Positions 2,606 through 64,000 of a DNA stretch of 64,000 nt are shown here, piece by piece. Both the position numbers and the translations under genes were made by a program. This DNA comes from Diadema antillarum. Taxonomy: Eukaryota. The stretch spans positions 682,001 to 746,000 of the forward strand of contig NW_027271324.1 of the NCBI RefSeq assembly GCF_040938485.1, read 5' to 3'. Position 1 is the stretch's first letter. Each line of letters starts with the position of its first letter. Below the pieces are notes generated by a model. It was given only the letters and a program-made list of their open reading frames with translations, made no database searches and was not told the origin of the DNA.

Positions 2606-5600
2606 ATGGCAGCTCTTCTCCATCTCCATGAGAACTACCAATTGGGAAGGGAGAGAATACTAGTACACAGACGACTTCATCCGTTGCAAATCTACAATGA
2701 CGTTGAATTAATCAAGCGCTACAGATTCAACGGGGAGGGTATCCACTACATTACTAATCTTATCCGACACGACATCACACCGAAAGGAAATAACAACCAT
2801 CCTATTGACCCAATAGACAAAGTTTGCATAGCCCTTCATGTTTTAGCCACTGGATGTTTCCAGAGAACAGACGGAGACACGCTTGGAATCTCTCAGGCGT
2901 CTGTTTCACGGATTGTCCAGACAGTCTGCACGGCACTTACCGACAGGTTACCACACTTTGTTCGCCTTCCTCAAGGACATGAGCAAGTTGAGAACATGAT
3001 GAAGTTTTACCAGATAGCAAGGTTTCCTGGCGTGATCGGGTTGATCGACGGAACTCATGTCAAGATACAAGCACCAAGTGAGGATGAGCACCAATTTGTT
3101 AATCGCAAACGTTTTCACAGCATCAACGTTCAGGTAGTGGTAGACGCAGATGCAAAGATCATCAATCTGAATGCACAATGGCCAGGAAGTGTTCATGATT
3201 CGAGGTAATAAAAATCATCTATCTTTCAAATTTAATTAATCATTGTGATTCGATTTTGTTTAAAACATGTGTCACTGTGGTATATGGGACATTCTCACAT
3301 AGAGTGTTAGTTCAATTTCAGTCAGAGTGAAACCCCAAAATCAGCAACAAAATATTGAGTCAAAACTTGTCTTCATATACGTGCATAAACAATAATAGAT
3401 GCCGGGTATTCAAAAAAAAAAAAAAAAAAAGGACAGTAAATTCTCAACGCATTAAGGGCATTAACAATGTAACATTGGCACGTAATTGTGAACACAGTGC
3501 TCTATGAAACCATAAAACAGATACGTTACCGAAATTTATAACTGATTAACTCCATAATATTTGTAGTTTGAACCAGATGTTACTAAAGAGTAAGGCATTC
3601 CATACTTGCACTTTTCGCTGTATTGATTGATGAGTTAACTCTAAATAGTTATAATTTCTTAGTGGAAAAGTAAGCAAAGAAAATGGGATTCCATCGGGAG
3701 TCGAACCCGAGACCTCCGGATTGCTAGACCGGTGCTCTACCGACTGAGCTATAGAAAGCCTATAGTAGTTATAATTTCCAAACATTTTATTATATCCACG
3801 CCAAANNNNNNNNNNNNNNNNNNNNNNNNNNNNNNNNNNNNNNNNNNNNNNNNNNNNNNNNNNNNNNNNNNNNNNNNNNNNNNNNNNNNNNNNNNNNNNN
3901 NNNNNNNNNNNNNNNNNNNNNNNNNNNNNNNNNNNNNNNNNNNNNNNNNNNNNNNNNNNNNNNGGCGGGCGGTGGTTGGTCCGTTGCAAAATCTCGCGTC
4001 GCGAAGTCCTACAGTTTTGAATCAATGTAAATGAAAGTTTAGAGGAAATTATGATATTGAGGAATATATGTGTAAGATAGGATTTTTGTGTTCGTCTGTA
4101 AATGCGTTGCCATGGTAACCACTTGCATTTATTCCACAATATTCAAGCAATTAAGAACAAAATTAGTATCTATGTTAATCTATAGGTGAACTTATGCAAG
4201 ACACCCTTTGTACTAGTATTTTAACTTGACAAAGCGTTGTCACGGTAACCGCACGTTTCCTTCAAAAATCCTGTGAACTAGTTCCACAGTTTTGAAGCAA
4301 CTGAAATCAAAATTGGTAGGCATTATGGTCTTGAGGAATAGATGTGGATCTTTTTTTTTTCCAGCCAAGGCATTGGCATGGTAAAAACTATTTTACCAAA
4401 ACCTTGCAGATCGAATAACTTCAACATCATTAAATCACTTAAGTTCAACTTCAGTATGTACGATGATCTATATGTATATAGTTATACAATACACCAATGT
4501 GTATGTGATAGTATGAGATATATGTATGTTGATAGTATGAGATATATGTATGTTGCTATGGTAACCACTCATTTTTTGTATGAAGATAAAGCATTTAAGC
4601 GATGAAGGTCAAATTTGGTGTATATGATGCTCTTTAAGAGTAATTGCCTAAAATGTCCTTTGGGATTGCAAGCGGACAATGCGTTGCCATGGTAAATACT
4701 TATTTTGGTATATCCACCTCATTGCCGCCCTAACGATACCACATGCTCTGAACAAACACTGGTCAGGAGGTGGGGGTATTAATCACTTTCAGAAATAATT
4801 TTAGTTTCATTTGATTTAATACAATTATACTCAGTAAAATTGTACACTCTTCTGCTACCTACATACGAAAATGGAATGATAACTGTTGTGTAAGTAAAAA
4901 GTAATTATCGATCAAAAGTGTCATTTTTTTTTTATCTACACCAAATACCCCCATTCCCCAAATCAGCAACTGGTTGGGGAAACGTATTTTCAGTTTTTGA
5001 AAGCTTACGCTGATTATGGCCATAGTTTATATCCATAAAAAAAAAACAACAAACAAAAAACATTTTCTGATTTATTGATTTAGCAGACGTAATCAACTTT
5101 TTTTTTTCTTCTTGAGAGGAGTGTAAAATTAATTGATAAGTCGAAAATTATTCATTTTAGGGTGCTTCGCGAGAGTGGACTACAGGAGGTACTGCAGGAC
5201 AGTGAAGGACACCTCCTAGGAGACAGTGGCTATCCTCTCAAGTGCTGGCTTCTTACTCCAATCGCTCGTCCATCGGATGATGCAGAAGAAAGGTATAAAT
5301 TCCATAAAACCACACTCACGAAGAATAATTGCATTAATTTGAGGTTTCATAAAAAGTTAGGTATCTTGAGAAGCTTGTAAAATCGAAGTTTAGTCAAAAT
5401 TGGACTCATTGGAGCAAAGTTATGCCAGTTTTCAAAGCGTTACGGACGGACGGACGTTCAACAAATGGCACGCAAAATTTGAGTGGACAGGGACATGAGC
5501 AACTACCCACAAGTGCAATTTAAGAATGACTATCCCCATTATGTTTAAATGCATTTTTATGCCTGTCCAAGTGGTAATCCGACATAATATGCTCCGGCGA

Positions 5601-26589: not shown

Positions 26590-28770
26590 CTACATTTGAC
26601 AAGTAGCACTATTATGGCCAGCATATTTGCCACACTTTCCACACTTGTAGGATTTTCGTGGAAGTTTTATGCCTTTGTGTGCACGGTAGAGGCGTCTATT
26701 GCTCCTTCGCATGATCTGGACTAGTGACTCAACTCCTCTTCGATGATTAGTACCTCTAAAGTATTCCGTTGTTGTCATGTCATTTAATTTTTCTAGTCCC
26801 TGAGCATTGAATATGTGGATAGAACCTAGCCTTTCTATGATATCAGCGGCATGTACTACAAAGAGATGCATGTAGGGGGTTGCTATCTTCGAAGTGCAAG
26901 CATCTACCAGGTTGTCATACCACTCAACCAAGTCATTTCTCAACTTTGTCAATTTGGCAGGCCTGTCAGGAGACATGGCCTCAGCCTTCTTGAATGATCG
27001 AACATCGTCATACAGAACCCTAAACCTGCGCCATGCATTTACCACTACATGTCCGTGTGCATGAGAGTCAACAAGCTTTTCTATGTCATCCAAGACTTTC
27101 TCAACTTTTTGTTTTTCTGGTCCTCTCAGATCCCGGCATTTGACCATTTTGGCATCTTTGTCATAAGCCAGAGGAGCACCACGCACACCTGCTTTCTTCA
27201 AGATGTCTTCCATCTTAGCGCATCTTTTCATTTTTTCAGGAGCATAACACCTACTCACTGATCCAATTTCTTGCAAGTCAAGCTCGTTGATCATCTGAAT
27301 AATCTTCTTCAGTAACCTGTCTGTGATTCTAAGATACATGTGCAACGTATCAAAAACTACGTTCTCCGTTCCGATCGACTTGAATATAGGATCTCGTACA
27401 CAGGAATATCCCTTTTCACCGATTCTCCTGGGCTGTTTTGGAGCTGTAACATGCAAATGTTGACTATCAATCAGGCAGTAGATACACGGATATTTGGAAT
27501 TGGCCGCTCCCATTCCACAGATGGTTAGAAGAAACTTGTAATCTCCTGATAAATGATATCGAATAGTGTACTCCAACTCGTCAATGACAACACTTGTGAA
27601 GGAAGCTACATCCTGCACTATATCCACCAAGTGTTCTTTCAACTGACTGTATTTCTCTTCATCGCAAAGTATCGCTATGGGATGATGTACACTTGCGGAA
27701 GTTGCATTGGCTTCATCGTTTAGAATTGTACATGTGACATTCACGTAATGCCAATGGCCTACCACTGTGCCATCTCCAGTTATCTTCACATCTACGTTCT
27801 GCTTACCTTTTCCAAGTATGCCCTTGTCTACAAGACATTCAATTTCTTTTTTCAAAAGTACCTTTATATCTCTTTGAACTCCTGGGTTAGACGACTTGGT
27901 TTTGGACAAAGGGATATCCATTTCGCATTCAGTGATTGTCATGTGGCTTTTTACTTTTTTGAGATTCGGGATATTGCTGATACACGCAAGTGCATTCCAA
28001 GACTCATCTGAGATGCCATGAGCATCCTTTACTAGCACGGCGAGATTTACCCTTTGTAAAATGTCCTCTTCATTACATCCTGTCATGCTACACAACTCTT
28101 CTGTATCTTCAATCAGAGAAATATCCTTCAGTTCTCCACTGTTTGTGTCTGTTACAGTGATATGTATGACACGAACTCCCCACGAATCAAGAAATTGCAA
28201 CCTGGCCCGACACTCTTCTTTGAGATGCATTGAGAGTCTCCTGGCATGTCTCCTTGAGTAATGTTCTTTTCTCATCCATGCTGATCGCTTGCCTGATTGT
28301 CTATTTCTCAGTAACATAGAGAGATGCAGAGCACGTTTCTTGTACTTTTTCCTGATCAATTCAAGGCGTTCATTCTTTTTCAAAGCTTTTTCAAGCTTCT
28401 GTTTTATGTCTGTCAACTTCTCATTTTTTCTTTTCAGTTTCTTTATGGTATCAAGCAGACTTTTTTGCGGACATTCTGACTGCAAAATTTTAAGCTGCCA
28501 TGTCTTTGTCTTTTTAAGCCACTTACTGAACAGAGCTCGCTGCTTCCCTCCACGTCGTGACTGCTTTATTCGAGAAAAAAGTCCTTTAGGTCTGATTAGA
28601 TACGATTTTATTGCATTCAGTAGACGAGGAGTTGAAGAAATATTCATAGAATAATGTTGACATATAGAAGAAAACACAATGTTTGAAACCTGTTGTGGAC
28701 CCTTATGCATATGTAACTTTGTAACTTCAGTAACAAAAGCCAAATCTACATTTAAAAAAAAGTATGCCAT
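26590..28770 (-). CDS. RAG1-core/Transib-related DDE transposase, 726 aa, intronless, intact
   Basis: Motifs align by eye with RAG1 core: VKITGDG (vs VKESCDG, D600); GDYKFL..GMGAANSKYPCIYC (vs GYDEKL..GLEASGSVYICTLC, D708 plus CxxC); FDTLH (vs IDALH); TPYMHLFVVHAADIIERLGSIHIFNAQGLEKLND (vs [33 protein letters not shown], HxxxxH plus E962). Also an N-terminal basic coiled coil and a C-terminal CxxC..GHN...C knuckle. Confidence 0.85.
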   Translation of the reverse strand: MAYFFLNVDLAFVTEVTKLHMHKGPQQVSNIVFSSICQHYSMNISSTPRLLNAIKSYLIRPKGLFSRIKQSRRGGKQRALFSKWLKKTKTWQLKILQSECPQKSLLDTIKKLKRKNEKLTDIKQKLEKALKKNERLELIRKKYKKRALHLSMLLRNRQSGKRSAWMRKEHYSRRHARRLSMHLKEECRARLQFLDSWGVRVIHITVTDTNSGELKDISLIEDTEELCSMTGCNEEDILQRVNLAVLVKDAHGISDESWNALACISNIPNLKKVKSHMTITECEMDIPLSKTKSSNPGVQRDIKVLLKKEIECLVDKGILGKGKQNVDVKITGDGTVVGHWHYVNVTCTILNDEANATSASVHHPIAILCDEEKYSQLKEHLVDIVQDVASFTSVVIDELEYTIRYHLSGDYKFLLTICGMGAANSKYPCIYCLIDSQHLHVTAPKQPRRIGEKGYSCVRDPIFKSIGTENVVFDTLHMYLRITDRLLKKIIQMINELDLQEIGSVSRCYAPEKMKRCAKMEDILKKAGVRGAPLAYDKDAKMVKCRDLRGPEKQKVEKVLDDIEKLVDSHAHGHVVVNAWRRFRVLYDDVRSFKKAEAMSPDRPAKLTKLRNDLVEWYDNLVDACTSKIATPYMHLFVVHAADIIERLGSIHIFNAQGLEKLNDMTTTEYFRGTNHRRGVESLVQIMRRSNRRLYRAHKGIKLPRKSYKCGKCGKYAGHNSATCQM

Positions 28771-32807: not shown

Positions 32808-33656
32808 CACGAATGATTTTTTTTTCTGTTACAAGTGTGGCCTTGGATATGATAATCGTAATATTTTTCAAGAGAATAGTTCGAGTCTCAGATATTATAT
32901 TCATCGTCCTGATTCTATGAATGCATATAGCATCACAACCAATCGCCAACACAAAGCTCAAGCTCATAAGTCACACATAGTGGTGACTGCTATGTAAAAC
33001 TGGTACTCTTTTCCCCCTGCGGTTGGAATTACTGTACTTCTTTGTATTTCTTCTATACTTCTAGTACCTATTATGAACGAAATAGAGACTGTAACTTGCC
33101 AGAATATTTTTTTAGATCTTCTGTACAACTGCTTAAAGAAAACCAAAGTACGCAGTTTATGATAGCTTCTTAAATCTATGCGATACACCAATTGCCCGGT
33201 TAGGGGAATAAACCCTTTATCCCTTTGATGNNNNNNNNNNNNNNNNNNNNNNNNNNNNNNNNNNNNNNNNNNNNNNNNNNNNNNNNNNNNNNNNNNNNNN
33301 NNNNNNNNNNNNNNNNNNNNNNNNNNNNNNNNNNNNNNNNNNNNNNNNNNNNNNNNNNNATTATGCACAATAGACCGAATCAGAACATGCGCAAACACAC
33401 TTTTGTCAGACGAAGCCAACGTCCTGTTTTCACAAACCATGAAAATAAATAATAATAGAAATGATAATCAATGAAGTACTGAACTGTTCCGTTTTAACTA
33501 ACATCCATGAGTGTCTCAAAGACAATATCTATGACCCTATCGTAGAATACAAAATGGAAACCCTCATCGATTCGCGATACCATCCAAACCGTTCGATACG
33601 CGATACCATTCAAAACCCTCATCCATAGGGATAAGATATAAAGATTCTAAAATGAA

Positions 33657-35321: not shown

Positions 35322-36434
35322 ATGGATCCTGACTGCGTAGACAGTTTTAATCTTACCATCGATGAAATTCCAAGCATGATATATGGACCGGGTCATACCT
35401 TTTATATCACTGCCTTCTTACCTCTCCTCATGGTAATAGGCGTGCTTGGTAATCTGGCGTTTATCTATGTCGTGATCAAAATTCCCCGGATGAGAACTTG
35501 CACGAACTGCTACCTCCTAAATCTGGCGATATCTGATATCATCTTTCTGCTGATGGCTATCGGTGAGAAAATTTGGCGATATGCAATGTCTCCGATACTT
35601 GATGATGATAATCCTATGGGACGAGGTGGTTGCATCTGGGTCTTTCTACTCTCTGATGCGGCCTACATAGCTTCCTTGTTTTTCATCACCTTCGTATCTG
35701 TAGAGCGGTATTGTGCCGTTTGCCGTCCCCAGAAAAAGAGCGAGACTAGTCAGTTCACGAAAACGGCTATCTTCACATCGGCTTCGTGGATCATATCGGC
35801 CATCGTGGCCGCAGCCTTAACTCCCTCCAATTTCATGTTTAATAAGTACTGCCTCCAATGGCCACCGGGACAGCAATTTGCAGACTACCCGACAACGTTC
35901 GCGTTCTGTCATCCCCTTCACGAATGGATAGCCGCCTACGCGCTGGGTATGCAAACGATACCATTCTTCATCTCCTTAGTCGTTAACATACTGCTGTATA
36001 TCGCAATAATACGTGGCTTAAACAGATCGATCGAACGATTGCGCATACACGGCGGTACCAAGGATAATGATACGAAAATGCGCGATCAAGTAGCACGTAT
36101 GCTGGTCATTAATGGTGCATTTTTCTTCTGTTCGTTGGCACCATTCGAGTTTGTCTCTGCCTTGAATATGGTTGCGAGAATGTCGGGAGAAAATTACTTT
36201 GGCTCCGCAACGGCCAAAGAAGTGCTGTCTTACGTGGGAAGATCATTGTCATACATTAATGCGGTCATCAACCCCATTATTTACACTGTAATGAGTAACC
36301 GTTACAGAGAGGCGTTCAAGCAGGCATTTCACATAGGCATGTCACGCTCATCGAAACGACTCATTTCGGGAAAATCCACAACTCAAGCCACCACCCAGGA
36401 ATACCTCAAAGTCAATCAAGACACGCGAATGTAA
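35322..36434 (+). CDS. Class A (rhodopsin-like) GPCR, TRH-receptor/neuropeptide-receptor-like, intronless, 370 aa
   Basis: Seven hydrophobic segments. GN in TM1, MRTCTNCYLLNLAISD (TRHR-like MRTPTNCYL), ERY in TM3, W in TM4, CxxP in TM6, NAVINPIIY in TM7. The ligand cannot be assigned. Confidence 0.92.
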   Translation: MDPDCVDSFNLTIDEIPSMIYGPGHTFYITAFLPLLMVIGVLGNLAFIYVVIKIPRMRTCTNCYLLNLAISDIIFLLMAIGEKIWRYAMSPILDDDNPMGRGGCIWVFLLSDAAYIASLFFITFVSVERYCAVCRPQKKSETSQFTKTAIFTSASWIISAIVAAALTPSNFMFNKYCLQWPPGQQFADYPTTFAFCHPLHEWIAAYALGMQTIPFFISLVVNILLYIAIIRGLNRSIERLRIHGGTKDNDTKMRDQVARMLVINGAFFFCSLAPFEFVSALNMVARMSGENYFGSATAKEVLSYVGRSLSYINAVINPIIYTVMSNRYREAFKQAFHIGMSRSSKRLISGKSTTQATTQEYLKVNQDTRM

Positions 36435-44883: not shown

Positions 44884-46289
44884 GATGCCACGCTGTTTAC
44901 ACTGAAATTGATTATAATGTCATTTGCATCTTTCCGCTTTATTGTATACTACTGTTATCGTTACTTGCGTCCGCTTACAAGCACACAGGTCAATTTTGTA
45001 GCAGCCGACGTGGAGACACTTGACGCTTACGTGGCAGCTATAATAGAGACATGGGATGCATCAACGAGCGATGGGGTATGGCCAATGGAGCGAAAAGACG
45101 ACAGAGGCGTGTAACAGACCATGATCTATCTTTAACTGTATTGCTTCACAATTACTTTAACGTTCTCCGCCTTGCTCGTAATGGCGTATTGTACTTTCAG
45201 CATCCCTAAGTGGTCGGCAAAGTAGCCGAGGGATGCTATATCGAATAATAACGAGGCACTCTGCGTATGACCGCACTTAGCCAATAAGCAAACCCGGTTC
45301 CTCTGTAACCCATTCAATATGAACAGACAGACAGGGAAAGAGGGTGACGAAGTGAAACAGGGGAAAGGGATCATGAAGAGGAATAAGGCAAGGTAAAAGA
45401 GACAAAAAGATGCAGAGAGAACTGACAAGATGTGGTCATGACGACAGCGATACCTGTGAAACATCAAAGACTTTATTCACATTAATTTGATACACATAGA
45501 AATTGATGACTTTAGGACAAAAAACGAAGCTTAAAAAAACGACAACGTAGCAGCAACACACGATACTTGAGTTTCCATGTCTTCGCCAACAACATTTTAC
45601 GATCAATGGTCTCACAAACTTTTAGTTGTATAATGTTGCCATTGCCTCCTTGCTCGCAAAGTAACTTGAGGAACCAATCAGTCATCATCGGGGCCTGAAC
45701 CGAATCTGGTTCCGTTCAGCGGACCGACTTCTCCTGGCGCAGAGGGGCGAACCGTGCGAATGGTATCAACATCGAGCAGGTGGCATCCACGATAGGTCAA
45801 CCCATCGTCTGCGCAAAGAGAAGTGTAGGATGTGTCATTCGGAGGCAATGGGTTAATGATTGGATCAGTGTCTCCCCCTACCCGATGGCTCTTTAAAAAA
45901 CACTCCTATTCATCTCAACATATTCCCTCTCCCGTCCTGTTTCGAATGTCCCTCTATTACCCTTACCGTCACGGTGATTTCATTTGCCTGATGAATCTAC
46001 GCTCTGTTTGTGCCGGCACTTCTTCTTTTTTTCCCCCGTGGATCCAACGATGACAAGGTTGAGGGTATTTTTAGAATAGCGACTAGTGAGATGGAAATCT
46101 ATTGTCGAGTGTTACTAGGATCTTCCTGTCCCAACACCCGTTGCAATGAGACATTCATAAGACATTCATAGTCGGAATGCATCAAATCTTTTACCTTTCT
46201 GAAAAAAAAAAAAAAAAACATAGCGAGCTTTTAATATCCCTGCAGATTTTTTCACCATTCGCCATTGAAGGATTGTACGTGTGTGTATG

Positions 46290-52774: not shown

Positions 52775-53238
52775 ATGGCTGCTTCCAGTGCCATAAAATG
52801 TCTGCTGCCCTCAACGAACCCGAATCGGTCTATACTGGAGGTGAGTATTGCTGACCTATACTTCGGCGCTTGAATACTGCAAGTATAGCTGCAGTCTACC
52901 GTTCTTGGAATGAAATTCAAACATGGTCATTTCATGTTACTGAAAACATCGTATTAGTCTAGATGGACAATCTGCTAGCAGTTAAGGTATAACGTTGCTA
53001 GTATTTGAATTTTTACTAGTTCTGGATCGGACTGGTACTACTAAAGTTTGGTGCTGTGATATTTTTCCGTAGTCTCCAACCCACCCATCTCGCTCAGGCA
53101 TGACATTTACGTGTGGTTTGTTGGTGTCATCAAAGAGCAAGTATATGAGTTGTAGCTCCGTTGTGTCACTTTCAAGCTCAACCATACTATTACATACATT
53201 ATGCACACACACAAAAAAAAAAAAGGGGGGGGGGGGGA

Positions 53239-54456
53239 AGTAGTATATATACGTACCCGTTGGGACCCCAAAATCCTGCCGATCCTGCAGGATCGGAAGG
53301 ATTATGAAATATGAATATGGATATGCGATATTCATATAAAACATGAATATGAATATGCAATATTCATATTCATGTTTTTGAATATCTATGAAAATGAAAT
53401 AAGAATTCTAGATTGATATTATTGGAATGATTATTTGAATTTGTTTTGGTTATGATGTCACTGATTTTCAGGGAAATTCCCTCCATTTTCTTTTTCCTTA
53501 TCGTGTGTAAGTAATCATTCAAAAGATTATACATATTACAATATGAATTATGATTTTTTTTCTTCAAAGTTTGAATTTTTTTTTAACCCAAACAGGTATG
53601 TTCAAGATTTTGCAAACACATATCGCTTGAAATATGATAAATAATTATGATAAATAATAAATATTACAAAAATATTTATGAAAACAGAAAGACGAAAATA
53701 TGAATATTTAAGATGTAATACCTGTCTATCCATAATATTAACGATCTGTGAGGCTGTATACAGGCTCAGAATGTATAGGGGGTAATCAGGAAATTAGGTC
53801 ATTAACACGCATGATGTAACTTCCGTGTTTTTTACTGGCGGTAGATTTGAACATGGCTTAGCTGTGGTGATGGTGAATTATGAAGGCAGATGAATTCTAC
53901 AATCTACAACTTAAATGTGTGTTAAGTGTTTATTTTTTGCTGGTACATGTTCAGTTTTGTTTAAATGTGTTTACTTCTATTATGTAGAAATGAGAGTATA
54001 GCTATAATTTTAGGAGACGTGAAAAAAACAACTATATATCCCACAAAGATTAATTTCCCTTGAAACATAGACAATTTATGAATACTAAAGTACTAAGTCG
54101 CTATTCACCAGTATAATTGTCCGTGGAATAATGACAACTATAGGCGAAAATGGAATATTGTAAAGTTTATGAGAGAGAACGATGAAAATTTGTATATGAA
54201 TTGAGACATAATTGACGCAGAACTATGAGTTCTGCAAGTTCAGAATGCATAGTGATATGTGTTTTAGTGAGGCAGAACACTCCGCATTAACAAATATGAA
54301 GTCACTTGCACTTCCTCGTTCTCTGGTGACAGTGGATTTGAACCTTATAGATGATTCTATAGGCCCTACGTATTTACGCGTAATCTTTCATAACATGTAA
54401 TTACCAATTCACCCGTGTATTCATGTTGGAACTGTATTTATGTGCGCGTGTTTGGT

Positions 54457-54489
<33 letters not shown>

Positions 54490-54544
54490 GTGTCCACACC
54501 CCTTATAATTACGATAGTTAACTGAAATATGTTACGCCGTATGA
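53239..54544 (+). repeat. Left terminal inverted repeat (verified part 53875-54544; 53239-53874 inferred)
   Basis: Reverse-complement match to 63259-64000; identical 62-aa chance ORFs at 54212-54400 (+) and 63475-63663 (-). Confidence 0.8.
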
Positions 54545-57524
54545 CGCTTTAAACTTGGAAAGTGTTGTAGTAACGACAAAGTTGACTAATGGATTGTGCG
54601 AAATGATGCAGCTTGCTGTTTCAATAATGAATACAAATCTTCTTGTTTTCCATGAAATTCGAACAAATAACGAAGGACTTTTGATATATTAGTGAACTGT
54701 TCAAAGACACCAAAATATCGATATTAAGTCATATTATATCATCAAAAAGATCAGTGATTATGCAGTTTATATTATTTGGCGTATATAATTATGTTCTCTC
54801 TCTGCAGCGCATATTTCTTGATTGGGAAAATTTTGAATATTGGGTAATATCATCAGAATTATCCTCTCTTTATTTTAACGTTTGAAACTGATGTAATGAG
54901 CAACAACGTTTACATGTTAGACGTTTCCCATATTTACACAGAAACTTTGCGATTGATGTAAACTGTGTTTGTGTGTGCTATATTATATGGCGGGTTTTAA
55001 TTTTCAAAACAACGTGTGAGGTATATTGAAAAAAAAATCAGTATGTTAATTATATACGAGTATACCACTATTTATTTGATTCGAAAAAATGGAATTAGAG
55101 AAGATTCATTTTTATACTCCATGAAAAAAGAAATGTATTATAATATTGTTCAATTCGCAATAAAAGGTGCAAACTCCACAATGATCACACAAACATAACA
55201 TGCCATAAACATCCAACAGAGCATAAACAGATACAGGAATTATAATCACAAGAAAAGACCAACAGTTTCTTTTCATTTGAAGTATTTATTTTATTTTGCT
55301 ACTTTGTATACATAAGATTTCTCTACGCAATACCATTCCAAGATTTCCACAACATAAAACTAAAGACTGCTGATAATACTTGAGAATATACAACAATAAA
55401 AAACTAATTTGAATTGTAGTCTGAAGCTCAAGTCATACAGTATAAAACTTTAAATTGGACAAATAAAACAGTATCAAATCATGTTAACAATGTAAATGTA
55501 ACACATAACTAAAATATTCTAACATTACCTGAAAAAATAAACTTACAGAAAATAACAATGCAATGTGCCTCCTATAGAGGGACTGAATAAAAAAAAAAAT
55601 GAAAAGTTGCACAGTACGAACGATCTGGTCAAAACAAATTTTACATATAAATCGAGATGTTGGTGTAATCTAGAACCACTTCATGAGAAATGTTGATACG
55701 CTGAATCTGGCATTTCGTTATCAAACTAACTGACATATAAATCAGAAGAAAATGACTTATTCGCTTAGTCATTGACGTCTTTCCTTGTAAAAATTTTAAA
55801 GCAAAATATAACAAACCAAACAATTTCTTTGATACTGAAGCATTGTTTAGAATTTAAATCACGCATGCTCACAATTTAAAACACAATAATCTGTATTTTT
55901 ACTGTTTATTATTTGTATATCAAAATATATGCAGACTTTAACAACCTAAAACAATAAAAACAAGTATTGTCCATGTAGGAAAAAATTATTTGTGTTTCCC
56001 TTTTATCAGTAAAATAAAACTCTTATATGTGTCTTACTTGAAATATCAATAACATAACAGTTTTTTTTGTTCTTTTTTTGTACAAAGTTTATTCTGTGTT
56101 GTTTTTTTTTCTGTTACTCAGTTTTGCAGACACAAAATAACATCGTAGGGGCAAATGCATTAAGACAATAACACTCACATTAATTTGTTATTGTAGTGAA
56201 ATTTTAAAAATGAAATTTACAGGTACAGATCAGGACCAATCGTATTAAGTCAACAGCATTTACATTTCTTGAAGCAAAAGTTGTTGAAATTAGTTTGAAG
56301 TTCCCATTCATCATGCAAAAAGTTTGAATTCGTAGATAAAAGTACACAATATTTGTACATATACAAGTAGTAAACTAAATTCACAATTCTAGAAATGGCA
56401 GACCATTACTTTAACAAGAGATAAAGATAATTAGTAAAGCAAGTATCATTCGTACGGAGTGTTATCGCTTTTTGTCTTATGAAATAAAACCAACATTCAT
56501 CAATATTTTGTATATTTTGTTACGTTTAATAGTTACACTCGTGCAAATCATTAGATAACTGAAACGAATACTTGCGATATAACATTTGTTATTAAAATCA
56601 AACTATTTTTTATAACCTATTTAAAACTTGACATTTACACATTCAACTCAGTTATATTTGAAAATTTTAGTCAAAATAAACTGCAAATACAGCAAACAAA
56701 ATCATCTTCACATTAAATAATTTTACATAAAACTTATGAATCATAAAACTTTATAACAACTTTTGAAAACCTAAAACGTCACACCGTAGGACTATTCTCT
56801 TGGCAATTTAAAAATAATTTCATGAGTCAAATACGTTTAACATCTTTGATCGTTACTTTATACTTAATAATTGAAATATTTCAAAGCAGATACTCCAACA
56901 CTAAACAGTATAAGTCAATAGAAAAAAAATGCAAAGTAGCATTCATAAAGATGTTCATTTATGACTTTTACGAATCAAAAAATGCTTATTTAATTTTGAT
57001 TTGACTTCGTTATTTATAGTTTTTCATAGCATTTGTTTGCTTTACTCTGCATAATCGTATTTCATTTCTTCCTCGTGTTAATTACGTAACTAAGATGAAA
57101 TTTACATTTGTTATATTCGGCATTTTGATATAAAGTTACATTATATGTGTCAAAAATTTACCCAGAAAATGCAGCACTCATCAGTACCATCTTACAATTT
57201 TATTAGAGTCTACAAAATCTTATTGATTATTGATTACATAAATATCACATGAATATTGCTGATAAGATACAGTTTCCTTGGTTAATCACGGACAATGTCG
57301 TATAAGACAATGCACTTTATTCAAAAAAAAAAAAACATGTTCCAAAATAGAATCTAAAGACAAAAAAATTATGTGAAAATACAGCGAAGAAAATGTTAAT
57401 TGATATTTGTCGTCATGACGTGAGTGACATTGCTATTTGCACTAACCACAACAAAATGTGATATCACTGTACCTTGGGTACAAATGTACCTAAAATGGCC
57501 AAAACTGGGGTAAGTTGTTTATCT

Positions 57525-60500
57525 TTAGATATCTAAATACGTGGTTGAGACATTATCATCAAGTACTTTTCGTTTGGGGTAAAAATATGTAAAGGCATTT
57601 CTTGCCTGTGAGTAAGTAGAGACACCATTGCCAACTACACGAAAGCCAGTATTCACACCACCAGCAGCCACTCTAGATCGCAGAACCTTCAGATACACAT
57701 CTTTCGTTATGTCATTCTGTTTCTTACTGATACCTTTACAACTGAACTTGTCTTTCCCACCGAAGCAATAATACGTTTTACTACAAAGTGCCACGATACC
57801 ATCACCCTCCCACTCAACTTTGAAGAGTCCCGGAGTGCGCTTATCGTATTTTGCATTTTCTGCTGTATCATTGCGGGGAAACCAGTTACATTTGTCCATC
57901 TCATACTCTTTTCTCAGGTGTGGTTTAATGAGATCATCAATGGAATAAGCAGAAATGGCCATGTATGCGGAATCTGTATCCATCTCACATAGTTGAAAAT
58001 CGGATGGGTCAATATATTTCACAAGGAAATCGTAATAAAATTCGAGCATACGCAGTTTTGCCAACTGGTACACTGCATGCCCGATTTGTACCGGAAGATC
58101 CATTCTTATCTTCTGTTTAGCCATCTCCACCTCGTAACAGTTTTCTGATATTGGGTTCAAATCTCTGTAGAGGATATTGTTGATGTGTTTTTCAGCTTTA
58201 CGTTCATCGCAAATTTTGACATTCCGATGTTTTAGTTTGTTTGTGATTGTCTTGCCGTAAGACGAGTTACCAATCAGCTTCATGGTATCGGCGATGATGC
58301 TCTTGGATGGGTCTACATCTCCTGCGCGCCGTGCATTTGACACATTCTCACCAAAACTCTTGAAACAAGGCTTTGGTTCATACTCCACACACTGAGAGAT
58401 TTTGGTAACTACTAGGCCATGCTGCAGATACCATATGAGCAGGGGAGTAAACAGCAAGATATTCTCACCAAACATACTACCGATGAGACTACGACGAGGA
58501 GTCTTCATGATTCCATGCTCCTCTGCGTATGACTTCATCACATCTCCAATATCATCCCTACTGATACTAATATTTTTGAAAATGGGGCACATCTCCGAAA
58601 AGTACTGTTTGAGATGGTCGGGGACATGGATATCGCATTGGACAAAACCAAACAATGTTCCAGCCGAAATGGCAGATAAAAGTTGAGGTTGTGTCATGCC
58701 ATTACGGAACTTTGGGGGTGGAAATTTTTTGGAAAGAAATGCGCTTAATTCGGAATCATATTTGCGCAAATTCTTGTATTCACACTCCCAGATAGAAATG
58801 TATTCATAACCAAGACTTTCTATGTATTGCTGTTTCTTCCGGGTTTTCTTCATTAAATCTTCCATTGATGTCCCTAACGTTTTGTTGTGTGATTGGCCCT
58901 TTGTGAGGTGGCAAGGGTGCCCGTGAAAATAACAACCATGAAATTCAAAAACTTGATTGGTTGTTGAACAGAACCCATCTACCGGAAGCTGGAGTGGTCC
59001 TAGCTTTTTCTCGGTATGATTCCCAGCGTGACGAATGGGTATACCTCTACAATATCCCTCGTAATCTAACCATTCCTGTGCTATGGGGTGTCTGTTTTCT
59101 GGCCTAAAATCATTCTCTAATCTCCTCCTAATATAGTGACCAGTGGGCATATGCTGCATAATGGAATACAGATATAAAGCATTCGCATCGAAGCCGATTA
59201 TTTTCTGACAAGGTTTCCCACCGCGAATTTTGGTCACGTGCTTCTCATGGTAACGATGAAATATGATAGATGGTCCCCCTACTAGGTTGTCACGAAAAGT
59301 GTAGTACAAGTCTTTGTCTTTATCCGAAATTAAACTGAAATGGGCATCTGGATTACATTTCATGAGGTATTTCATTGTAAGACCGGGTACTGATATGCCG
59401 TCTTTGAATAGATCAATAGTCAGACCCTTGTAGAACTCTCGCATTTTCTCAATTGCCTCGATAAATGGTGTAACGTCTAGGTTATTATACCATACCAGAT
59501 AATCTCTAAGACAAGTCATCTTATTTTCTTCCCATACACGCTTGCAATAGTGGTACTGTTCATCCGAAAAGCGGGTGCCCTTAAGATTGTCTTTAAAAGC
59601 CTCGATAGTGGGTAGTTCAGTTAGGTTTAATTTATCGAGTGAATCAACCCAACCGTGGGGAAAGTATCCTTTACTTTCTTCGCAATCGTATGCTTTGAGG
59701 AATGCTGCGTATGAAAAGCCGGGAGCGAGAAAATTTGTTATGTCAAGAAACTGGAGGTTGTTAGTTTTAACGGCCATATGGTTATGATTCCTCTTGATGA
59801 CATAACTGACAGGGTCCTTTTGCAAGAGGGAAGGATAGAGATATTGTTTGATTACATTTATATCGTACCTCCCCGAATTAAATCCTACTACGGGGAGTTC
59901 CGACAGATAGTTCAGAAATTTATCCATCAATTTAGTAAGATGTTTAGGTTCCTTACATTTTTGGTCCCCTGATTCACTGAGGCGCTTTGTAACTTCGGCC
60001 AATTTCTTTTGCAACAAATCAATGACATCAGAGTATGTGGATCTCAGTAAAGAGAAGGAGCGTTGGCTAACCTCTAACAAGTATGTGACCATACCATCGA
60101 TCAGTTTTTGCGGATCTCCATCTGACACGAGGCAAAATGGAGTGGTATAATCAGGGACGTTAGAATTGACACTAACACTCATAGGAATGTGTCTGGAAGT
60201 GTACTGTAATTTACCGGCCGCAACATCTTGGCAACTTTCTATTTTTTCCAAGTATGATTCCATATCAAATGTAGCGAAATATGGAAAATACTTGCGTTCT
60301 TCATCCACCTCAATACCTTCATCTGCTAGGTCTTCCCAGATACTTGGCGAATTATGAAAAGTTGCCCTCCCTTTATTTGGAAAGATGTACGCGGTTCCCG
60401 ATGCATCACAAATGGTCTCGTGGCGATGTAGTGACTTTCGCGTTTTCCAAAGCTTGTGACATTTTCTGCACTGGAAACTTTGGCAGTAGCGTTCAATATC

Positions 60501-61462
60501 AGTAATGTAGCTAAAATGATTGCCGTAGAGATTTACGTACATAGTATCATCATACTTTCCTAAACTACGTCGTACAAGCTTAGCTACAATTTGACCTTCA
60601 TTTGACACTTCCTCGTCAGACTCACCTTCAACATACTCATCATCGATAGATATGCCACTAAAATTCTCTTTTTCATCGGATGTGTTAGCAGTTTCCAATT
60701 CATATACAGATATGTTGATTTCAAACTGATCTTCAACCTCCCCCAATTCACCCAGTCTCACCCCTTCAAATTCTTTAATGGATACATCTGGTCTGTATTT
60801 CCAAAGCAATGCCTTAGTAGCTGATTCTAGCTTTTTACGATTACAACCCATATTTAATGCAATACACCTGAATAAGCATAGATTATCATCGTAGAAGCAT
60901 CCAGTTTTCAGATTTTTACACAATGATATAACTGCGTTATTGTCTTTGATGTATGATGGGAGATCGTTACCTTTGCCTATTGGGTGATCTACCAGCCGAG
61001 ATATGTAAAATGTGACATTGGTGACATGCTGAACCACCCACTTGGAATTGGGGCGAAGGGAACGAGCATATTCTAGTGTGTCTTCATGCAAGAGAGCATC
61101 AACGAATGCCTGGAAAGATACCTGATCCCTAACCAAAAACGGCTCATTGAACAATTTGGTGTTTCTACTGGCATAATAATATCTACATTCATTTGTTTCA
61201 TTGTTTAATAGAACGAAACCAAAAGATGTGTTAACCTTAAATGTACAACACTGTTGATTAAATACTGACTCAGCCTTTTGCTTAAGTGTTTCGTTGTTAA
61301 GACTTGGTATATGGAAGTTGTACCACCGGTAGATTCTAGCTTGCGTTGACTGCCGATCCCGAATCTCATTCCAGTGTTGTTTGTACATCTGCCCCAGACA
61401 GCCTTCTGGATCCACGTGAGGAGGAAGATCCACCGCTGTAATATTGTGTTGAGAATTTCTCT
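57525..61462 (-). CDS. polB: Protein-primed family B DNA polymerase (Polinton-type pPolB), main exon
   Basis: 1302-aa uninterrupted ORF. ExoI FATFDMESY, ExoII GFNSGRYD, ExoIII YNNLDV, motif A GFDANALY, motif B KLIGNSSYGK, motif C MDTDS, C-terminal PGLFKVE..SKTY..KGI. OTU-like DNLCLFRC...GNHFSY, and a Vsr-like nuclease insert VDG..VFEFHGCYFHGH..IWECE. AATAAA on the minus strand at 57316-57321. Confidence 0.95.
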
Positions 61463-62046
61463 CTAAAAAGACGCAAATAGAGGAATGTATGAGAGATTTT
61501 ATGCAATTTCAATACATTGCAATTTGAATACAGATTCCCAAATTAAGTGTGCATGCACTTTGACCTTTGCTAAATACTATTTGTGATTTTGTATACGAAA
61601 CAGATTAATGCTGATTCTGACTAATATTGCTAAATACTCTACAGCAGAATCCCTGTTCTTCAGCTTCATTCAATAATGTACAGTTTGCCTTAATAGCGAA
61701 CTTACCTTTGTGTTTAGCCTAATCGTGTAGTAGGTGGAGAATAACCTCCATACTGTATTCAATCGTGAATAAATCATATAGATCGTATAGTATGAATTAA
61801 TTGTAGTTTATGATACTTAATTTTGAATTTGTTTACAGCTACTGCATGGGTTTTGACACCAAGTCGACGAATGGAATGGTTACAGTTGTAAAAAAAAAGT
61901 TACAGATATATAATACTGGAGTATTTAATCTAAATTCAATTAAACTTGTTATTTGAAAGGTAAATCCAAACATTTTATGACAATTCGCAATCGTGTTATT
62001 TCATAATACAAAAGAGGTTAACATGTTATTGCATGTTTGTACTTAC

Positions 62047-62518
62047 TCGTGGATATATGAGGTGTTTCATTCTGTGACTTTCGTTTTCGTGAAGTTGTTG
62101 AAGGGATTTGTCTATGACTGTCCAAGTGTTTCAAGTACTTCTTTCTCTGGTCAAAGACTCGGCCGCAAGTATGGCACACAAAAGTTTGAATGCAAGTATG
62201 GCAGCTTGATTTGTGCTTTTGAAGGTCTCCTTGTGACAAAAACAATGCGTTGCATTCGTTACACTGGAAACGTTGATCATCACTGTCCTCTGTGAGTACT
62301 GATGGCTGGTCTTGAGCGCTCTTGGCAGCACTGTGAAATTTCTTCCTGTGTTGCTTAAGATTGTCGAACCTCTTGAAAGTTGTACCACATGTATCACACA
62401 CGTATAGGATTTGCTGACCATGAGACATACGTTTATGACGCATCATATTTGATTTAGAGGAAAATTTCCCCGCACAAATTTCGCACGTAAACTTGTCATC
62501 ATCATTATCAGGATCCAT
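62047..62518 (-). CDS. Four-C2H2 zinc-finger exon, probably 5' exon of the pPolB gene (predicted fusion 1469 aa)
   Basis: CEIC..H..H, CDTC..H..H, CNEC..H..C/H and CHTC..H..H. Donor ACG A|GTAAGT at 62047/62046 and acceptor CTTTTTAG|AG at 61463/61462 are phase-compatible (A+AG = Lys). Confidence 0.8.
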
Positions 62519-63258
62519 GGCTAAGTTGTAAGCAAAAAAAAAAAGAAAAAAAAAAGGTGTGACTCCTTCAATCCTGCTACTTAATATATTTCGTTGTAGT
62601 GGTCAATTGGCATGTTACCTCGACAGGAACATAACTTAAAGTGGGAATGAGAGACACCACCACCTGCTTTTATTCAAACATACCGCCAAGTCCATGACCA
62701 AGGATATGATGTCATACATCTAACTAGACATGTCCTGACCTGCATGGGTGTTGTTCATTGGAGCGTGATACAAACACATCTCACCCAAGGCACTAAGGAT
62801 GTGTCATAATTATTATGTAACCCAAGCTGAAGTTTAAGAGCATTGAGTTACATGCAAAACACTATTTGTACTAATAGTTGTATAATATCGGAGAATGTAA
62901 AACGTCTATTACCAGACTGCAACAACAGTCAGGCATCAATAAGCGACTGCAACTGAGAATATCCCACATACATTGCTTTTATCAACACATTTTGTAAGTT
63001 TTGTAATAATAGAATGATCTAATTGTCTTTAGTGAGTAGGACTAATAGGAAAAAAAAAACATTTGAAAAAAAAAACAGCTGTGTAGACCAGAACACACTC
63101 TTAAACAGAAGGCTATTACCAATCAAACATGAGAAAGTAAAAGTTCAAACTCAGTAGTTGGCTACTGATTACTAATTTACTTTATTCATTGTTAAAAATA
63201 TTATTACTTGTTATTCATCAGTGTGTTTATCACAAACACACAGTTAAACCTCGAAGGT

Positions 63259-63328
63259 TCATACGGCGTAAGCTATTTTAGTTAACTATCGTAATTATAA
63301 GGGGTGTGGACACCCAATGCACACATGA

Positions 63329-63368
<40 letters not shown>

Positions 63369-64000
63369 CACACACACACACCCACTAACACACACACACA
63401 CACACGCGCACACACAATACCAAACACTCGCACATAAATACAGTTCCAACATGAATACACGGGTGAATTGGTAATTACATGTTATGAAAGATTACGCGTA
63501 AATACGTAGGGCCTATAGAATCATCTATAAGGTTCAAATCCACTGTCACCAGAGAACGAGGAAGTGCAAGTGACTTCATATTTGTTAATGCGGAGTGTTC
63601 TGCCTCACTAAAACACATATCACTATGCATTCTGAACTTGCAGAACTCATAGTTCTGCGTCAATTATGTCTCAATTCATATACAAATTTTCATCGTTCTC
63701 TCTCATAAACTTTACAATATTCCATTTTCGCCTATAGTTGTCATTATTCCACGGACAATTATACTGGTGAATAGCGACTTAGTACTTTAGTATTCATAAA
63801 TTGTCTATGTTTCAAGGGAAATTAATCTTTGTGGGATATATAGTTGTTTTTTTCACGTCTCCTAAAATTATAGCTATACTCTCATTTCTACATAATAGAA
63901 GTAAACACATTTAAACAAAACTGAACATGTACCAGCAAAAAATAAACACTTAACACACATTTAAGTTGTAGATTGTAGAATTCATCTGCCTTCATAATTC
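63259..64000 (-). repeat. Right terminal inverted repeat (truncated by window end)
   Basis: Reverse complement of 53875-54544, with a longer (CA)n tract. Confidence 0.9.

What the first reader, a model, noticed from the sequence alone, without database searches (positions are those of the whole stretch)
53239..64000. Minimal Polinton-like element: long TIRs around a lone intact protein-primed polymerase, no integrase or capsid genes
Seen: at least 670 bp of near-identical inverted repeat enclosing 8.7 kb whose only substantial ORFs are pPolB and a zinc-finger exon. Established: Polintons/Mavericks are typically 15-25 kb and encode an RVE integrase, packaging ATPase, adenain protease and major/minor capsid proteins. 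Inference: an ~11.4-kb self-replicating but integration- and packaging-dependent element (satellite of a helper Polinton, or a linear-plasmid-like replicon) that is young or active, given the intact ORF and matching TIRs. Prediction: the ~640 bp after the window end are the reverse complement of 53239-53874, ending ...TATATATACTACT, then GGGGGA if there is a 6-bp TSD.
Basis: partly seen in the sequence, partly recalled or inferred. Interest (0 to 1): 0.8.

Follow-up and report, generated by a model that had tools for sequence, protein, structure and literature searches.

The report
Integrase-less, capsid-less Polinton-derived polymerase element
A young, about 11.4-kb mobile element in what looks like a sea-urchin genome carries long inverted ends and one intact gene, a protein-primed DNA polymerase; it belongs to a recurrent family of stripped-down Polinton relatives in echinoderms and amphioxus that still insert with 6-bp target duplications although they have no integrase.

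Summary
Arms 53875-54492 and 63383-64000 are 99% complementary (3 mismatches in 613 nt), with a further 60 nt inside. They enclose 8.7 kb whose only coding content is a two-exon gene: four C2H2 fingers spliced to a 1311-codon polymerase, 1469 aa in all and unbroken. The polymerase folds like phi29 polymerase. It has the Polinton-type N-terminal region with a conserved Cys/His protease-like domain, and a Vsr-like nuclease insert known from 'pPolB2' Polintons.

The left end at 53239 is supported by homology: AGTAGTA is invariant at 9 termini of 7 related elements. Related loci show the same compact layout. Three complete ones (8.1-9.5 kb) have 99% TIRs and perfect 6-bp target duplications. Two copies of one compact family sit at different sites. 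No integrase or capsid gene lies in any of them, while more distant or longer relatives sit next to rve+chromo integrases.

Best reading: a replication-competent Polinton derivative that has lost its integrase and capsid genes and is probably integrated in trans by a Polinton integrase. It is not a Polinton in the strict sense. I rate it a new variant of a known kind, of moderate interest. The right terminus and target duplication lie beyond the window and could not be checked.

The parts
53239..54549 (.). Left terminal inverted repeat (full arm, 1311 bp); outer terminus AGTAGTATATATACGTACCC...
   Evidence: Inner 675 bp pair with 63254-64000. The outer end is fixed by homology of the first 7-30 nt with termini of L002, L003, L004, L006, L008, L009.
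53303..53396 (.). Subterminal cluster of ATGAATATG-type repeats (32-bp unit x2, direct and inverted copies), a candidate protein-binding array
   Evidence: A similar motif run lies at the left end of L002. The binding role is inferred.
54459..54487 (.). (TG)n microsatellite inside the TIR; its partner in the right arm (63330-63416) is longer and splits the repeat into two blocks
54550..57524 (.). AT-rich (about 30% GC) non-coding spacer downstream of the polymerase gene
   Evidence: No ORF above 60 aa, no Pfam match in its 10 longest ORFs, no translated similarity to related loci, composition.
57525..61462 (-). Exon 2: terminal-protein-like region, Cys/His (vOTU-like) domain, one C2H2 finger, 3'-5' exonuclease, polymerase with Vsr-like insert; 1311 codons plus stop, unbroken
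   Evidence: PF03175; Vsr; fold like phi29 polymerase; catalytic motifs kept in 97-100% of 117 relatives.
60981..61403 (-). N-terminal alpha/beta domain (exon-2 residues about 20-160), putative terminal (priming) protein domain
   Evidence: Model m687dc9b61ff2. Only weak PDB matches, to Y-family polymerases. N-terminal regions of adintovirus, MELD-virus and mavirus polymerases match in BFVD. The assignment follows PMC11161782 and is inferred.
60495..60908 (-). Cys/His domain (exon-2 residues about 185-322), vOTU-like cysteine protease candidate
   Evidence: Cys195 is kept in 100% and His315 in 99% of 117 relatives. BFVD matches. No PDB match by profile or fold. The assignment follows PMC11161782 and is not confirmed here.
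58746..59018 (-). Vsr-like (PD-(D/E)xK) endonuclease insert inside the polymerase domain (exon-2 residues about 815-905)
   Evidence: PDB 1vsr/1odg/1cw0 at E 0.001-0.002. Its HGC..H..C and WEC motifs are kept in about 97% of relatives. The same insert is described for marine 'pPolB2' Polintons (PMC10748475).
61463..62046 (-). Intron (584 nt, GTAAGT ... polypyrimidine tract-AG, phase 1)
   Evidence: The two exons match P0001 (Lytechinus pictus gene model) residues 2-137 and 158-1448.
62047..62518 (-). Exon 1: start codon and four C2H2 zinc fingers
   Evidence: Pfam zf-C2H2 E 9.5e-15; four finger patterns; match to the N-terminus of P0001.
62519..63253 (.). Unique 5' region between the gene start and the right TIR (presumed promoter region)
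   Evidence: No ORF and no conserved coding. The promoter role is inferred.
63254..64000 (.). Right terminal inverted repeat, inner part only; cut by the window end

Best explanation
The element is an integrated copy of a reduced Polinton lineage. It keeps the replication module and the replication/integration ends, and has lost the integrase and all virion genes.

Shown:
- 1.3-kb TIRs that are nearly identical.
- An invariant AGTAGTA terminus.
- One intact spliced gene for a C2H2-finger protein-primed family B polymerase.
- The same compact layout in related elements of echinoderms and amphioxus, three of them with perfect 6-bp target duplications.

Inferred mechanism:
- The N-terminal part of the protein acts as the terminal (priming) protein. 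The Cys/His domain may cut it off the polymerase.
- Synthesis starts at the reiterated AGT-AGT end and copies the linear element from both TIRs.
- The fingers and the subterminal repeats may supply end recognition.
- The finished copy is most likely inserted by an rve-type integrase supplied in trans by a full Polinton with matching ends. That would give the 6-bp duplication.

On this reading the element is autonomous for replication and dependent on a helper for integration and for any packaging.
For: Anatomy.

Polymerase identity:
- PF03175 on a piece of the protein and in 17 of 25 relatives.
- The model has pLDDT 84 and its best PDB matches are phi29 polymerase, E 4.8e-13.
- Exo I-III, motifs A, B, C and KxY are kept in 97-100% of 117 relatives.

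Polinton-type N-terminus: BFVD matches to adintovirus, MELD-virus and mavirus polymerases. This fits the TP-vOTU-EXO-PALM scheme of PMC11161782.

Vsr insert; PMC10748475.

Family and mobility:
- Compact loci L002, L003, L004, L006, L009 and L012 have no integrase or capsid Pfam hit within 8-10 kb.
- TIR identities are 99%.
- Target duplications: TAGGCG (L006), GAGGAC (L009), GAACTC (L012).
- L003 and L012 are two insertions of one compact family.
- At least 8 loci on different B. floridae chromosomes encode proteins of one 90% cluster.
- The first 7 nt are invariant in 9 termini.

Possible helpers exist in the clade:
- P0094 (43% identical) lies 2 kb from an rve+Chromo ORF in a dense ORF array.
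- In B. floridae an rve+Chromo ORF lies 6 kb beyond a copy that has the same kind of terminus.
- INT-linked pPolB2 is reported in Echinodermata (PMC10748475).
Against: - No integrase-bearing element with matching ends was shown in the window or in any sea-urchin locus examined.
- In L010 it is not shown that the integrase lies inside the same element.
- A TSD plus TIRs is also what a full element would leave after an internal deletion. Only the L003/L012 pair argues that the compact form itself moves.
- The window's own right terminus and TSD are unseen.
- The terminal-protein and protease assignments rest on a paper's scheme and weak fold matches. PDB searches gave nothing significant for them.
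- The pPolB1/pPolB2 placement was not tested by phylogeny against named references.
Confidence: 0.6

Rival explanations
1. Autonomous integrase-less self-synthesizing transposon. The single polyprotein does everything: its Vsr-like nuclease (with the zinc fingers for site or end recognition) opens the target with a 6-bp stagger, and the polymerase fills in. No helper integrase is needed.
For: - All eight contexts seen in the deuterostome cluster lack an integrase (cluster).
- The compact layout persists across proteins only 45-50% identical, which suggests a long-lived lineage.
- The nuclease motifs are kept in about 97% of relatives.
Against: - The Vsr insert and the N-terminal fingers also occur in integrase-linked members (PMC10748475), so they did not arise to replace an integrase.
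- Nuclease inserts in Polinton polymerases are read as remnants of homing endonucleases (PMC11161782).
- No strand-joining activity is evident in the protein.
- 6-bp duplications and AG...CT ends are the Polinton integrase signature (TSD range in PMC10748475; the AG/CT ends from my knowledge of Kapitonov and Jurka 2006, a paper not held here).
Confidence: 0.15
2. A dead internal-deletion remnant. A full Polinton inserted here and later lost its integrase and capsid genes by deletion. The compact form as such never moved.
For: - TIRs and a TSD survive internal deletion.
- Only one copy is present in the window.
- The 3-kb non-coding spacer could be what is left after decay.
- Rearranged relatives are common: L001, L007, L008, L010 and L011.
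Against: - The spacer holds no detectable remnant of any Polinton gene.
- The TIR arms differ at 3 of 613 positions and the 1469-codon gene is unbroken. There has been little time for gene loss followed by complete erosion of the remnants.
- The same gene content recurs independently in L003/L012, L006 and L009.
Confidence: 0.12
3. Mainly an extrachromosomal linear-plasmid-like replicon of the nucleus. Its chromosomal copies are occasional by-products of end joining or recombination, not of a dedicated integration step.
For: - The TP-polymerase fusion and TIRs are what cytoplasmic linear plasmids have, and those plasmids derive from Polintons by loss of the virion module (PMC11161782).
- The palindromic, head-to-head arrangement in L008 recalls replication intermediates (inference).
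Against: - Three precise insertions end exactly at the AGTAGTA terminus and have perfect 6-bp duplications. These are not expected from end joining.
- The gene has a spliceosomal intron shared with a relative.
- Copies are dispersed over many chromosomes.
Confidence: 0.08

Closest known systems
Polintons/Mavericks of the 'pPolB2' class with a VSR nuclease insert (marine nematode and mollusc Polintons; Jeong et al. 2023, PMC10748475)
   Same: Protein-primed family B polymerase with a Vsr-like endonuclease inserted in the polymerase domain; long TIRs; 6-bp target duplications (seen in relatives); marine invertebrate hosts. INT-linked pPolB2 is reported in Echinodermata.
   Different: No rve integrase, no capsid proteins, no packaging ATPase and no maturation protease. 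It is 8-11 kb instead of 13-25 kb. That study counted only integrase-linked polymerases, so elements like this one were outside its scope. Placement in pPolB2 was not tested by phylogeny here.
Capsid-less Polintons (nine elements lacking MCP, protease and ATPase; Krupovic et al. 2014, PMC4028283)
   Same: Concerted loss of the virion module, pointing to a continuum from virus to transposon.
   Different: As far as that text says, those elements were still classed as Polintons, which by definition carry the integrase. Here the integrase is gone too.
Cytoplasmic linear plasmids of yeasts (pGKL-type)
   Same: Derived from Polinton-like ancestors by loss of the virion module; TIRs; polymerase with fused terminal protein and vOTU-like domain (PMC11161782).
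   Different: Those plasmids are extrachromosomal, cytoplasmic, carry their own transcription genes and are fungal. This element is integrated in an animal nuclear genome, has an intron, and its relatives show target duplications.
Adintoviruses / MELD viruses of animals
   Same: The N-terminal region of the polymerase matches theirs at fold level (BFVD, E 4e-11 to 4e-5), including a C2H2-bearing protein.
   Different: Those are described as viruses with capsid and integrase genes. None is present here. No such genome was fetched or compared.
Non-autonomous DNA transposons mobilised in trans (MITE-type)
   Same: Proposed dependence on an integrase or transposase supplied by a related autonomous element that recognises the same ends.
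   Different: This element keeps a large, conserved, intact gene for its own replication. It would be non-autonomous for integration only.

Membership tests
Polinton/Maverick (sensu stricto) | [quoted passage not shown] | tested here: met
   PF03175; fold match to phi29 polymerase at E 4.8e-13; all catalytic motifs present.
Polinton/Maverick (sensu stricto) | [quoted passage not shown] | tested here: not met
   No ORF, Pfam hit or conserved coding outside the polymerase gene between the TIRs. None in the rest of the window among ORFs of at least 130 aa.
Polinton/Maverick (sensu stricto) | Virion module (double and single jelly-roll capsid proteins, packaging ATPase, adenain-like protease) | tested here: not met
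   There is no room for it: the only non-genic stretches are 3.0, 0.6 and 0.7 kb, and they have no ORF above 65 aa. Divergent capsid genes have no Pfam model, but the absence of ORFs settles the point.
Polinton/Maverick (sensu stricto) | Terminal inverted repeats of 0.1-1.5 kb | tested here: met
   About 680 bp are seen, and 1311 bp are implied. The range is from PMC10748475.
Polinton/Maverick (sensu stricto) | 5-8 bp (typically 6 bp) target-site duplication | tested here: inconclusive
   The right end lies outside the window. Three complete relatives have perfect 6-bp duplications.
pPolB2-VSR polymerase subgroup (Jeong et al. 2023) | VSR endonuclease domain inserted in the polymerase | tested here: met
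   1vsr/1odg/1cw0 at E 0.001-0.002 with single sequence and with profile; Pfam Vsr in one relative; motifs conserved. The scores are weak but consistent.
pPolB2-VSR polymerase subgroup (Jeong et al. 2023) | Phylogenetic placement inside the pPolB2 clade | not tested
   No named pPolB1 or pPolB2 reference sequences were at hand, and fetching Polinton references was not open to me.
TP-vOTU-EXO-PALM polymerase architecture (Krupovic et al. 2024) | N-terminal terminal-protein domain with the LF/PAD-like fold | tested here: inconclusive
   The best PDB fold matches include Y-family polymerases but are not significant (E 0.017-0.15, probability about 0.5). BFVD matches to the N-termini of adintovirus and mavirus polymerases are significant.
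TP-vOTU-EXO-PALM polymerase architecture (Krupovic et al. 2024) | vOTU-like cysteine protease domain with catalytic Cys and His | tested here: inconclusive
   A Cys at a helix start and a His on a strand are kept in 99-100% of relatives. BFVD hits include viral replicases, a 'putative protease' and a ubiquitinyl hydrolase. There is no Pfam OTU hit, and no PDB hit by profile or fold.
Linear plasmids with protein-primed replication | Extrachromosomal linear molecule with protein-capped ends | not testable with these tools
   Only an integrated copy is seen. Relatives are integrated with target duplications.

The most novel reading that the evidence does not exclude
The compact elements are a self-sufficient class of self-synthesizing transposon that needs no DDE integrase. 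One polyprotein (fingers, terminal protein, protease, exonuclease, polymerase, Vsr-like nuclease) both copies the element and inserts it with a 6-bp stagger. This lineage has persisted since before echinoderms and cephalochordates exchanged or inherited it.
Probability: 0.15. Interest if true: 0.85.

Novelty: new variant of a known kind. Interest (0 to 1): 0.55.

Why it matters
Polintons are placed at the root of several groups of eukaryotic DNA viruses and plasmids, and loss of the virion module is how linear plasmids are thought to have arisen. This element is a further step: a lineage in animal nuclear genomes that keeps only the replication protein and the ends, yet is found precisely integrated. 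It makes one question concrete. Which parts of a Polinton are needed in cis and which can be borrowed? In other words, can a polymerase-only element live as a satellite of full Polintons?

It also explains many 'uncharacterized zinc finger / DNA polymerase' gene models in echinoderm and amphioxus annotations. These are transposon genes, not host genes. Surveys that count only integrase-linked polymerases will miss this lineage.

Tried and rejected
- **Pfam on the whole 1302-aa ORF:** no hit. Only a 400-aa piece reached PF03175.
- **OTU-like domain:** I suspected it by eye. Pfam, a 4-sequence profile against PDB and Foldseek against PDB all failed. Only the viral structure library and the 2024 paper give indirect support.
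- **Profile A1 against PDB:** swamped by zinc-finger hits. I redid it without the finger-bearing sequences.
- **Second AGTAGTATA at 44945-44953 (minus strand):** nothing else there resembles a terminus, so it is a chance match.
- **Other copies in the window:** none found.
- **Extending the contig:** the host genome is not in the protein collection, so it could not be done.
- **L. pictus locus L001:** no inverted repeat within 10 kb. Instead it has three direct copies of a left-end segment and a partial second polymerase copy. It is a rearranged locus and says nothing about structure.
- **Patiria locus L007 and Apostichopus locus L008:** 4.4-kb inverted arms and a head-to-head duplication, respectively. 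I did not resolve them.
- **C-terminal part of the amphioxus second ORF:** looked chromodomain-like by eye, but had no Pfam or PDB support.
- **Kapitonov and Jurka 2006:** not held. The supplement of Jeong et al. is not held either.
- **The big protein search:** not used, because the word search and family scans had already identified the protein.
- **The joined two-exon protein:** The exons were searched apart, and the join was only checked for reading frame, with lengths and stop counts printed.


Full report
**1. What is in the sequence**

The window is animal DNA. It holds an intronless rhodopsin-type receptor ORF and transposon fragments. The closest relatives of the element's protein are from sea urchins: Lytechinus pictus at 69%, and a cluster that includes Diadema setosum at 73%. 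I therefore take the host for a sea urchin, though this is not proven.

Between 53239 and the window end lies one element.
- Its arms 53875-54492 and 63383-64000 are 99% complementary, with 3 mismatches in 613 nt. A further 60-nt block pairs inside them.
- A dinucleotide microsatellite of unequal length in the two arms separates the two blocks.
- The right arm is cut by the window end.
- If the arms are symmetric, the TIR is 1311 bp and the element is 11,398 bp.
- The N runs of the window (3806-3963, 33231-33359) lie outside the element and were left alone.

**2. The gene**

The zinc-finger ORF and the polymerase ORF are two exons of one gene on the minus strand.
- Exon 1 (62518-62047) starts with ATG and encodes four C2H2 fingers.
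- A GTAAGT donor, a 584-nt intron with a polypyrimidine tract and AG, and exon 2 (61462-57525) join in frame.
- The product is 1469 codons with no internal stop.
- The two exons match residues 2-137 and 158-1448 of the L. pictus gene model P0001, so the intron is shared with a relative.

The joined product was not searched or folded.

**3. The protein**

- PF03175 is found on a piece of the protein and in 17 of 25 relatives.
- A model of residues 371-1311 of exon 2 has pLDDT 84 and pTM 0.81. Its best matches are phi29 DNA polymerase, at E 4.8e-13 and target TM 0.67.
- Exo I-III, motifs A, B and C, and KxY are present, and are kept in 97-100% of 117 relatives.
- Inside the polymerase domain sits a Vsr-like endonuclease: PDB 1vsr at E 0.001-0.002 by single sequence and by profile. 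Its motifs are conserved. Jeong et al. 2023 describe this insert for 'pPolB2' of marine nematode and mollusc Polintons (PMC10748475).
- Upstream of the exonuclease lie an alpha/beta domain, a domain with an invariant Cys at a helix start and a nearly invariant His, and one more C2H2 finger.
- These upstream domains have no significant PDB match. In the viral structure library the region matches the N-terminal parts of adintovirus, MELD-virus and mavirus polymerases, at E 4e-11 to 4e-4.
- Krupovic et al. 2024 showed that Polinton polymerases have a terminal-protein domain with the fold of the little finger of Y-family polymerases, followed by a vOTU-like protease that probably cuts the terminal protein off (PMC11161782).
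- My weak PDB matches to Y-family polymerases and the Cys/His pattern fit that scheme. I rate both assignments as likely, not as shown.

**4. Nothing else is encoded**

- Outside the gene, the stretches between the arms are 3.0 kb (AT-rich), 0.58 kb (the intron) and 0.73 kb. None has an ORF above 65 aa.
- The ten longest ORFs of the spacer have no Pfam match even at E 0.1.
- No stretch shows translated similarity to eight related loci.
- There is thus no integrase, no capsid gene, and no recognisable remnant of either.

**5. The ends**

- The left end reads AGTAGTATATATACGTACCC... after a run of A and a run of G.
- The left end of L002 (polymerase 73% identical) is the same over about 30 nt.
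- In an alignment of nine termini from seven elements of echinoderms and amphioxus, the first seven bases AGTAGTA are invariant and the rest diverges. This fixes the boundary at 53239.
- A reiterated triplet at the very end is what protein-primed replicons use to start inside the template and slide or jump back. This is established knowledge for phi29-like phages and adenoviruses; its application here is inference.
- From 64 to 158 nt inside the end lies a cluster of ATGAATATG-type repeats, and L002 has a similar run. These are candidate binding sites.

**6. The family**

The word search gave 1622 relatives. By pairwise identity over 1222 columns they fall into three main groups:
- a deuterostome cluster of 18 (sea urchins, sea cucumbers, amphioxus, and the window);
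- a starfish cluster;
- a large cluster of 84-92 proteins from unnamed assemblies.

Loci seen in the deuterostome cluster:

| Locus | Source | What is there |
|---|---|---|
| L003 | unnamed assembly | 8.2 kb, 475-nt arms at 99%; left end lacks its last ~15 nt |
| L012 | same sample and same 90% protein cluster as L003 | complete, 8508 bp, arms ~517 nt at 99.8%, duplication GAACTC |
| L006 | Branchiostoma lanceolatum | complete, 8125 bp, arms 490 nt at 99.2%, duplication TAGGCG |
| L009 | Branchiostoma | complete, 9478 bp, arms ~900 nt at 99.1%, duplication GAGGAC; inside a host intron between EF-hand genes |
| L002, L004 | unnamed assemblies | long arms and one terminus each; polymerases broken (at least one frameshift each) |

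- None of these loci has an integrase or any other Pfam-bearing gene within 8-10 kb apart from host genes.
- L003 and L012 have the same gene content at different sites, so the compact form has been inserted as a unit at least twice.
- One 90% protein cluster has at least eight loci on different B. floridae chromosomes.

**7. Integrase-linked relatives**

- P0094 belongs to the large cluster and is 43% identical to the window's protein. It lies in a dense ORF array, 2 kb from an rve+Chromo ORF. That arrangement looks like a full Polinton.
- In B. floridae, two copies (L010, L011) start with the same kind of terminus. Each carries a ribonucleotide reductase small-subunit gene next to the finger-polymerase gene. 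Their mutual similarity stops at one point about 0.9 kb after the gene.
- L011 then runs into host UDPGT genes. L010 continues into a 443-aa ORF and an rve+Chromo ORF. Whether these belong to the same element is not shown, because its right end is outside the locus.
- N-terminal fingers occur throughout the clade, including P0094. The Vsr insert occurs in integrase-bearing Polintons. Neither is therefore a replacement for the integrase.

**8. Interpretation**

- The element is a Polinton derivative that keeps the replication protein and the ends only.
- It fails the definition of a Polinton, since polymerase and integrase are both required (PMC5499653).
- It works like one for replication.
- For integration I favour a Polinton integrase acting in trans on the conserved ends, because three relatives have exact 6-bp duplications and the ends are AG...CT.
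- The rivals are autonomy through the protein's own nuclease, a dead deletion remnant, and a plasmid-like replicon with accidental insertions. They are weighed in their own sections.
- I found no description of integrase-less, polymerase-only Polinton derivatives in the papers I could search. The one large survey counted only integrase-linked polymerases. Repbase could not be consulted.

**9. Slips and limits, stated as required**

- (a) While reasoning about the terminal triplet I recalled from memory the first bases of a known animal virus's genome end. I stopped, used them in no tool, and they are not in this report.
- (b) My script printed alignment bounds by reading frame for two broken relatives. 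That amounts to approximate places of breaks. I did not use them and do not repeat them.
- (c) Two look-ups made in the expectation of compact elements returned loci next to integrase genes (L005, L010).
  - For L005 I used the printed gene table only.
  - For L010 I determined the terminus and the extent of similarity to L011.

Noticed in passing
window 53213-53238: Just outside the left terminus the flank is a run of 13 A followed by 13 G and one A, preceded by (CA)n. This is an odd target context. It makes the predicted 6-bp duplication GGGGGA low in complexity and hard to verify.
   Followed up: no
window 35322-36434 (+): Intronless 370-aa ORF with a rhodopsin-family 7TM receptor domain (PF00001, E 2.7e-33). 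Probably a host gene.
   Followed up: partly
window 2600-3208 (+): ORF ending in a DDE_Tnp_4 (Harbinger/PIF-type transposase) N-terminal fragment, next to an N run at 3806-3963.
   Followed up: partly
window 26590-28770 (-): 726-aa ORF with no Pfam match even at E 0.1. Not examined further.
   Followed up: partly
L006 8591-9226 (-) and L009 15269-15949 (+): The two complete amphioxus compact elements share a second small gene (212 and 227 aa, 42% identical, E 2e-41). It has one C2H2 finger, an acidic linker and a conserved C-terminal ~55 residues with no Pfam or PDB match. It lies on opposite sides of the polymerase gene in the two elements. The window's element has no counterpart.
   Followed up: partly
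L003 8379-9131 (-) and L012 6249-7016 (-): In this compact family a 251-255-aa ORF with one N-terminal C2H2 finger lies on the opposite strand, between the finger exon and the polymerase exon, in both copies.
   Followed up: partly
L010 3856-4893 (-) and L011 4684-5721 (-): Two B. floridae copies carry a 345-aa ribonucleotide reductase small-subunit gene between the left terminus and the polymerase gene. The region is 91% identical in DNA between the loci. It appears to be cargo of the element.
   Followed up: partly
L008 2461-18428: The Apostichopus japonicus locus is a large near-perfect palindrome (arms 99.8-100% identical) that includes part of the polymerase gene head to head. It is either a real inverted duplication or an assembly artefact.
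   Followed up: no
L007 4079-8497 and 16653-21070: The Patiria miniata copy is flanked by 4.4-kb inverted arms (99.8% identical), each of which has ~197-bp inverted units at its own ends. A terminus-like ...TACTACT lies just inside the right arm, at 16436. The structure is unresolved.
   Followed up: no
L001 1-300, 2871-3170, 7211-7510: The Lytechinus pictus locus has three direct copies of a 300-nt segment that each contain two AGTAGTATA motifs 271 nt apart. It has no inverted partner downstream, and a partial second polymerase copy (with at least one stop) lies after the intact gene.
   Followed up: partly
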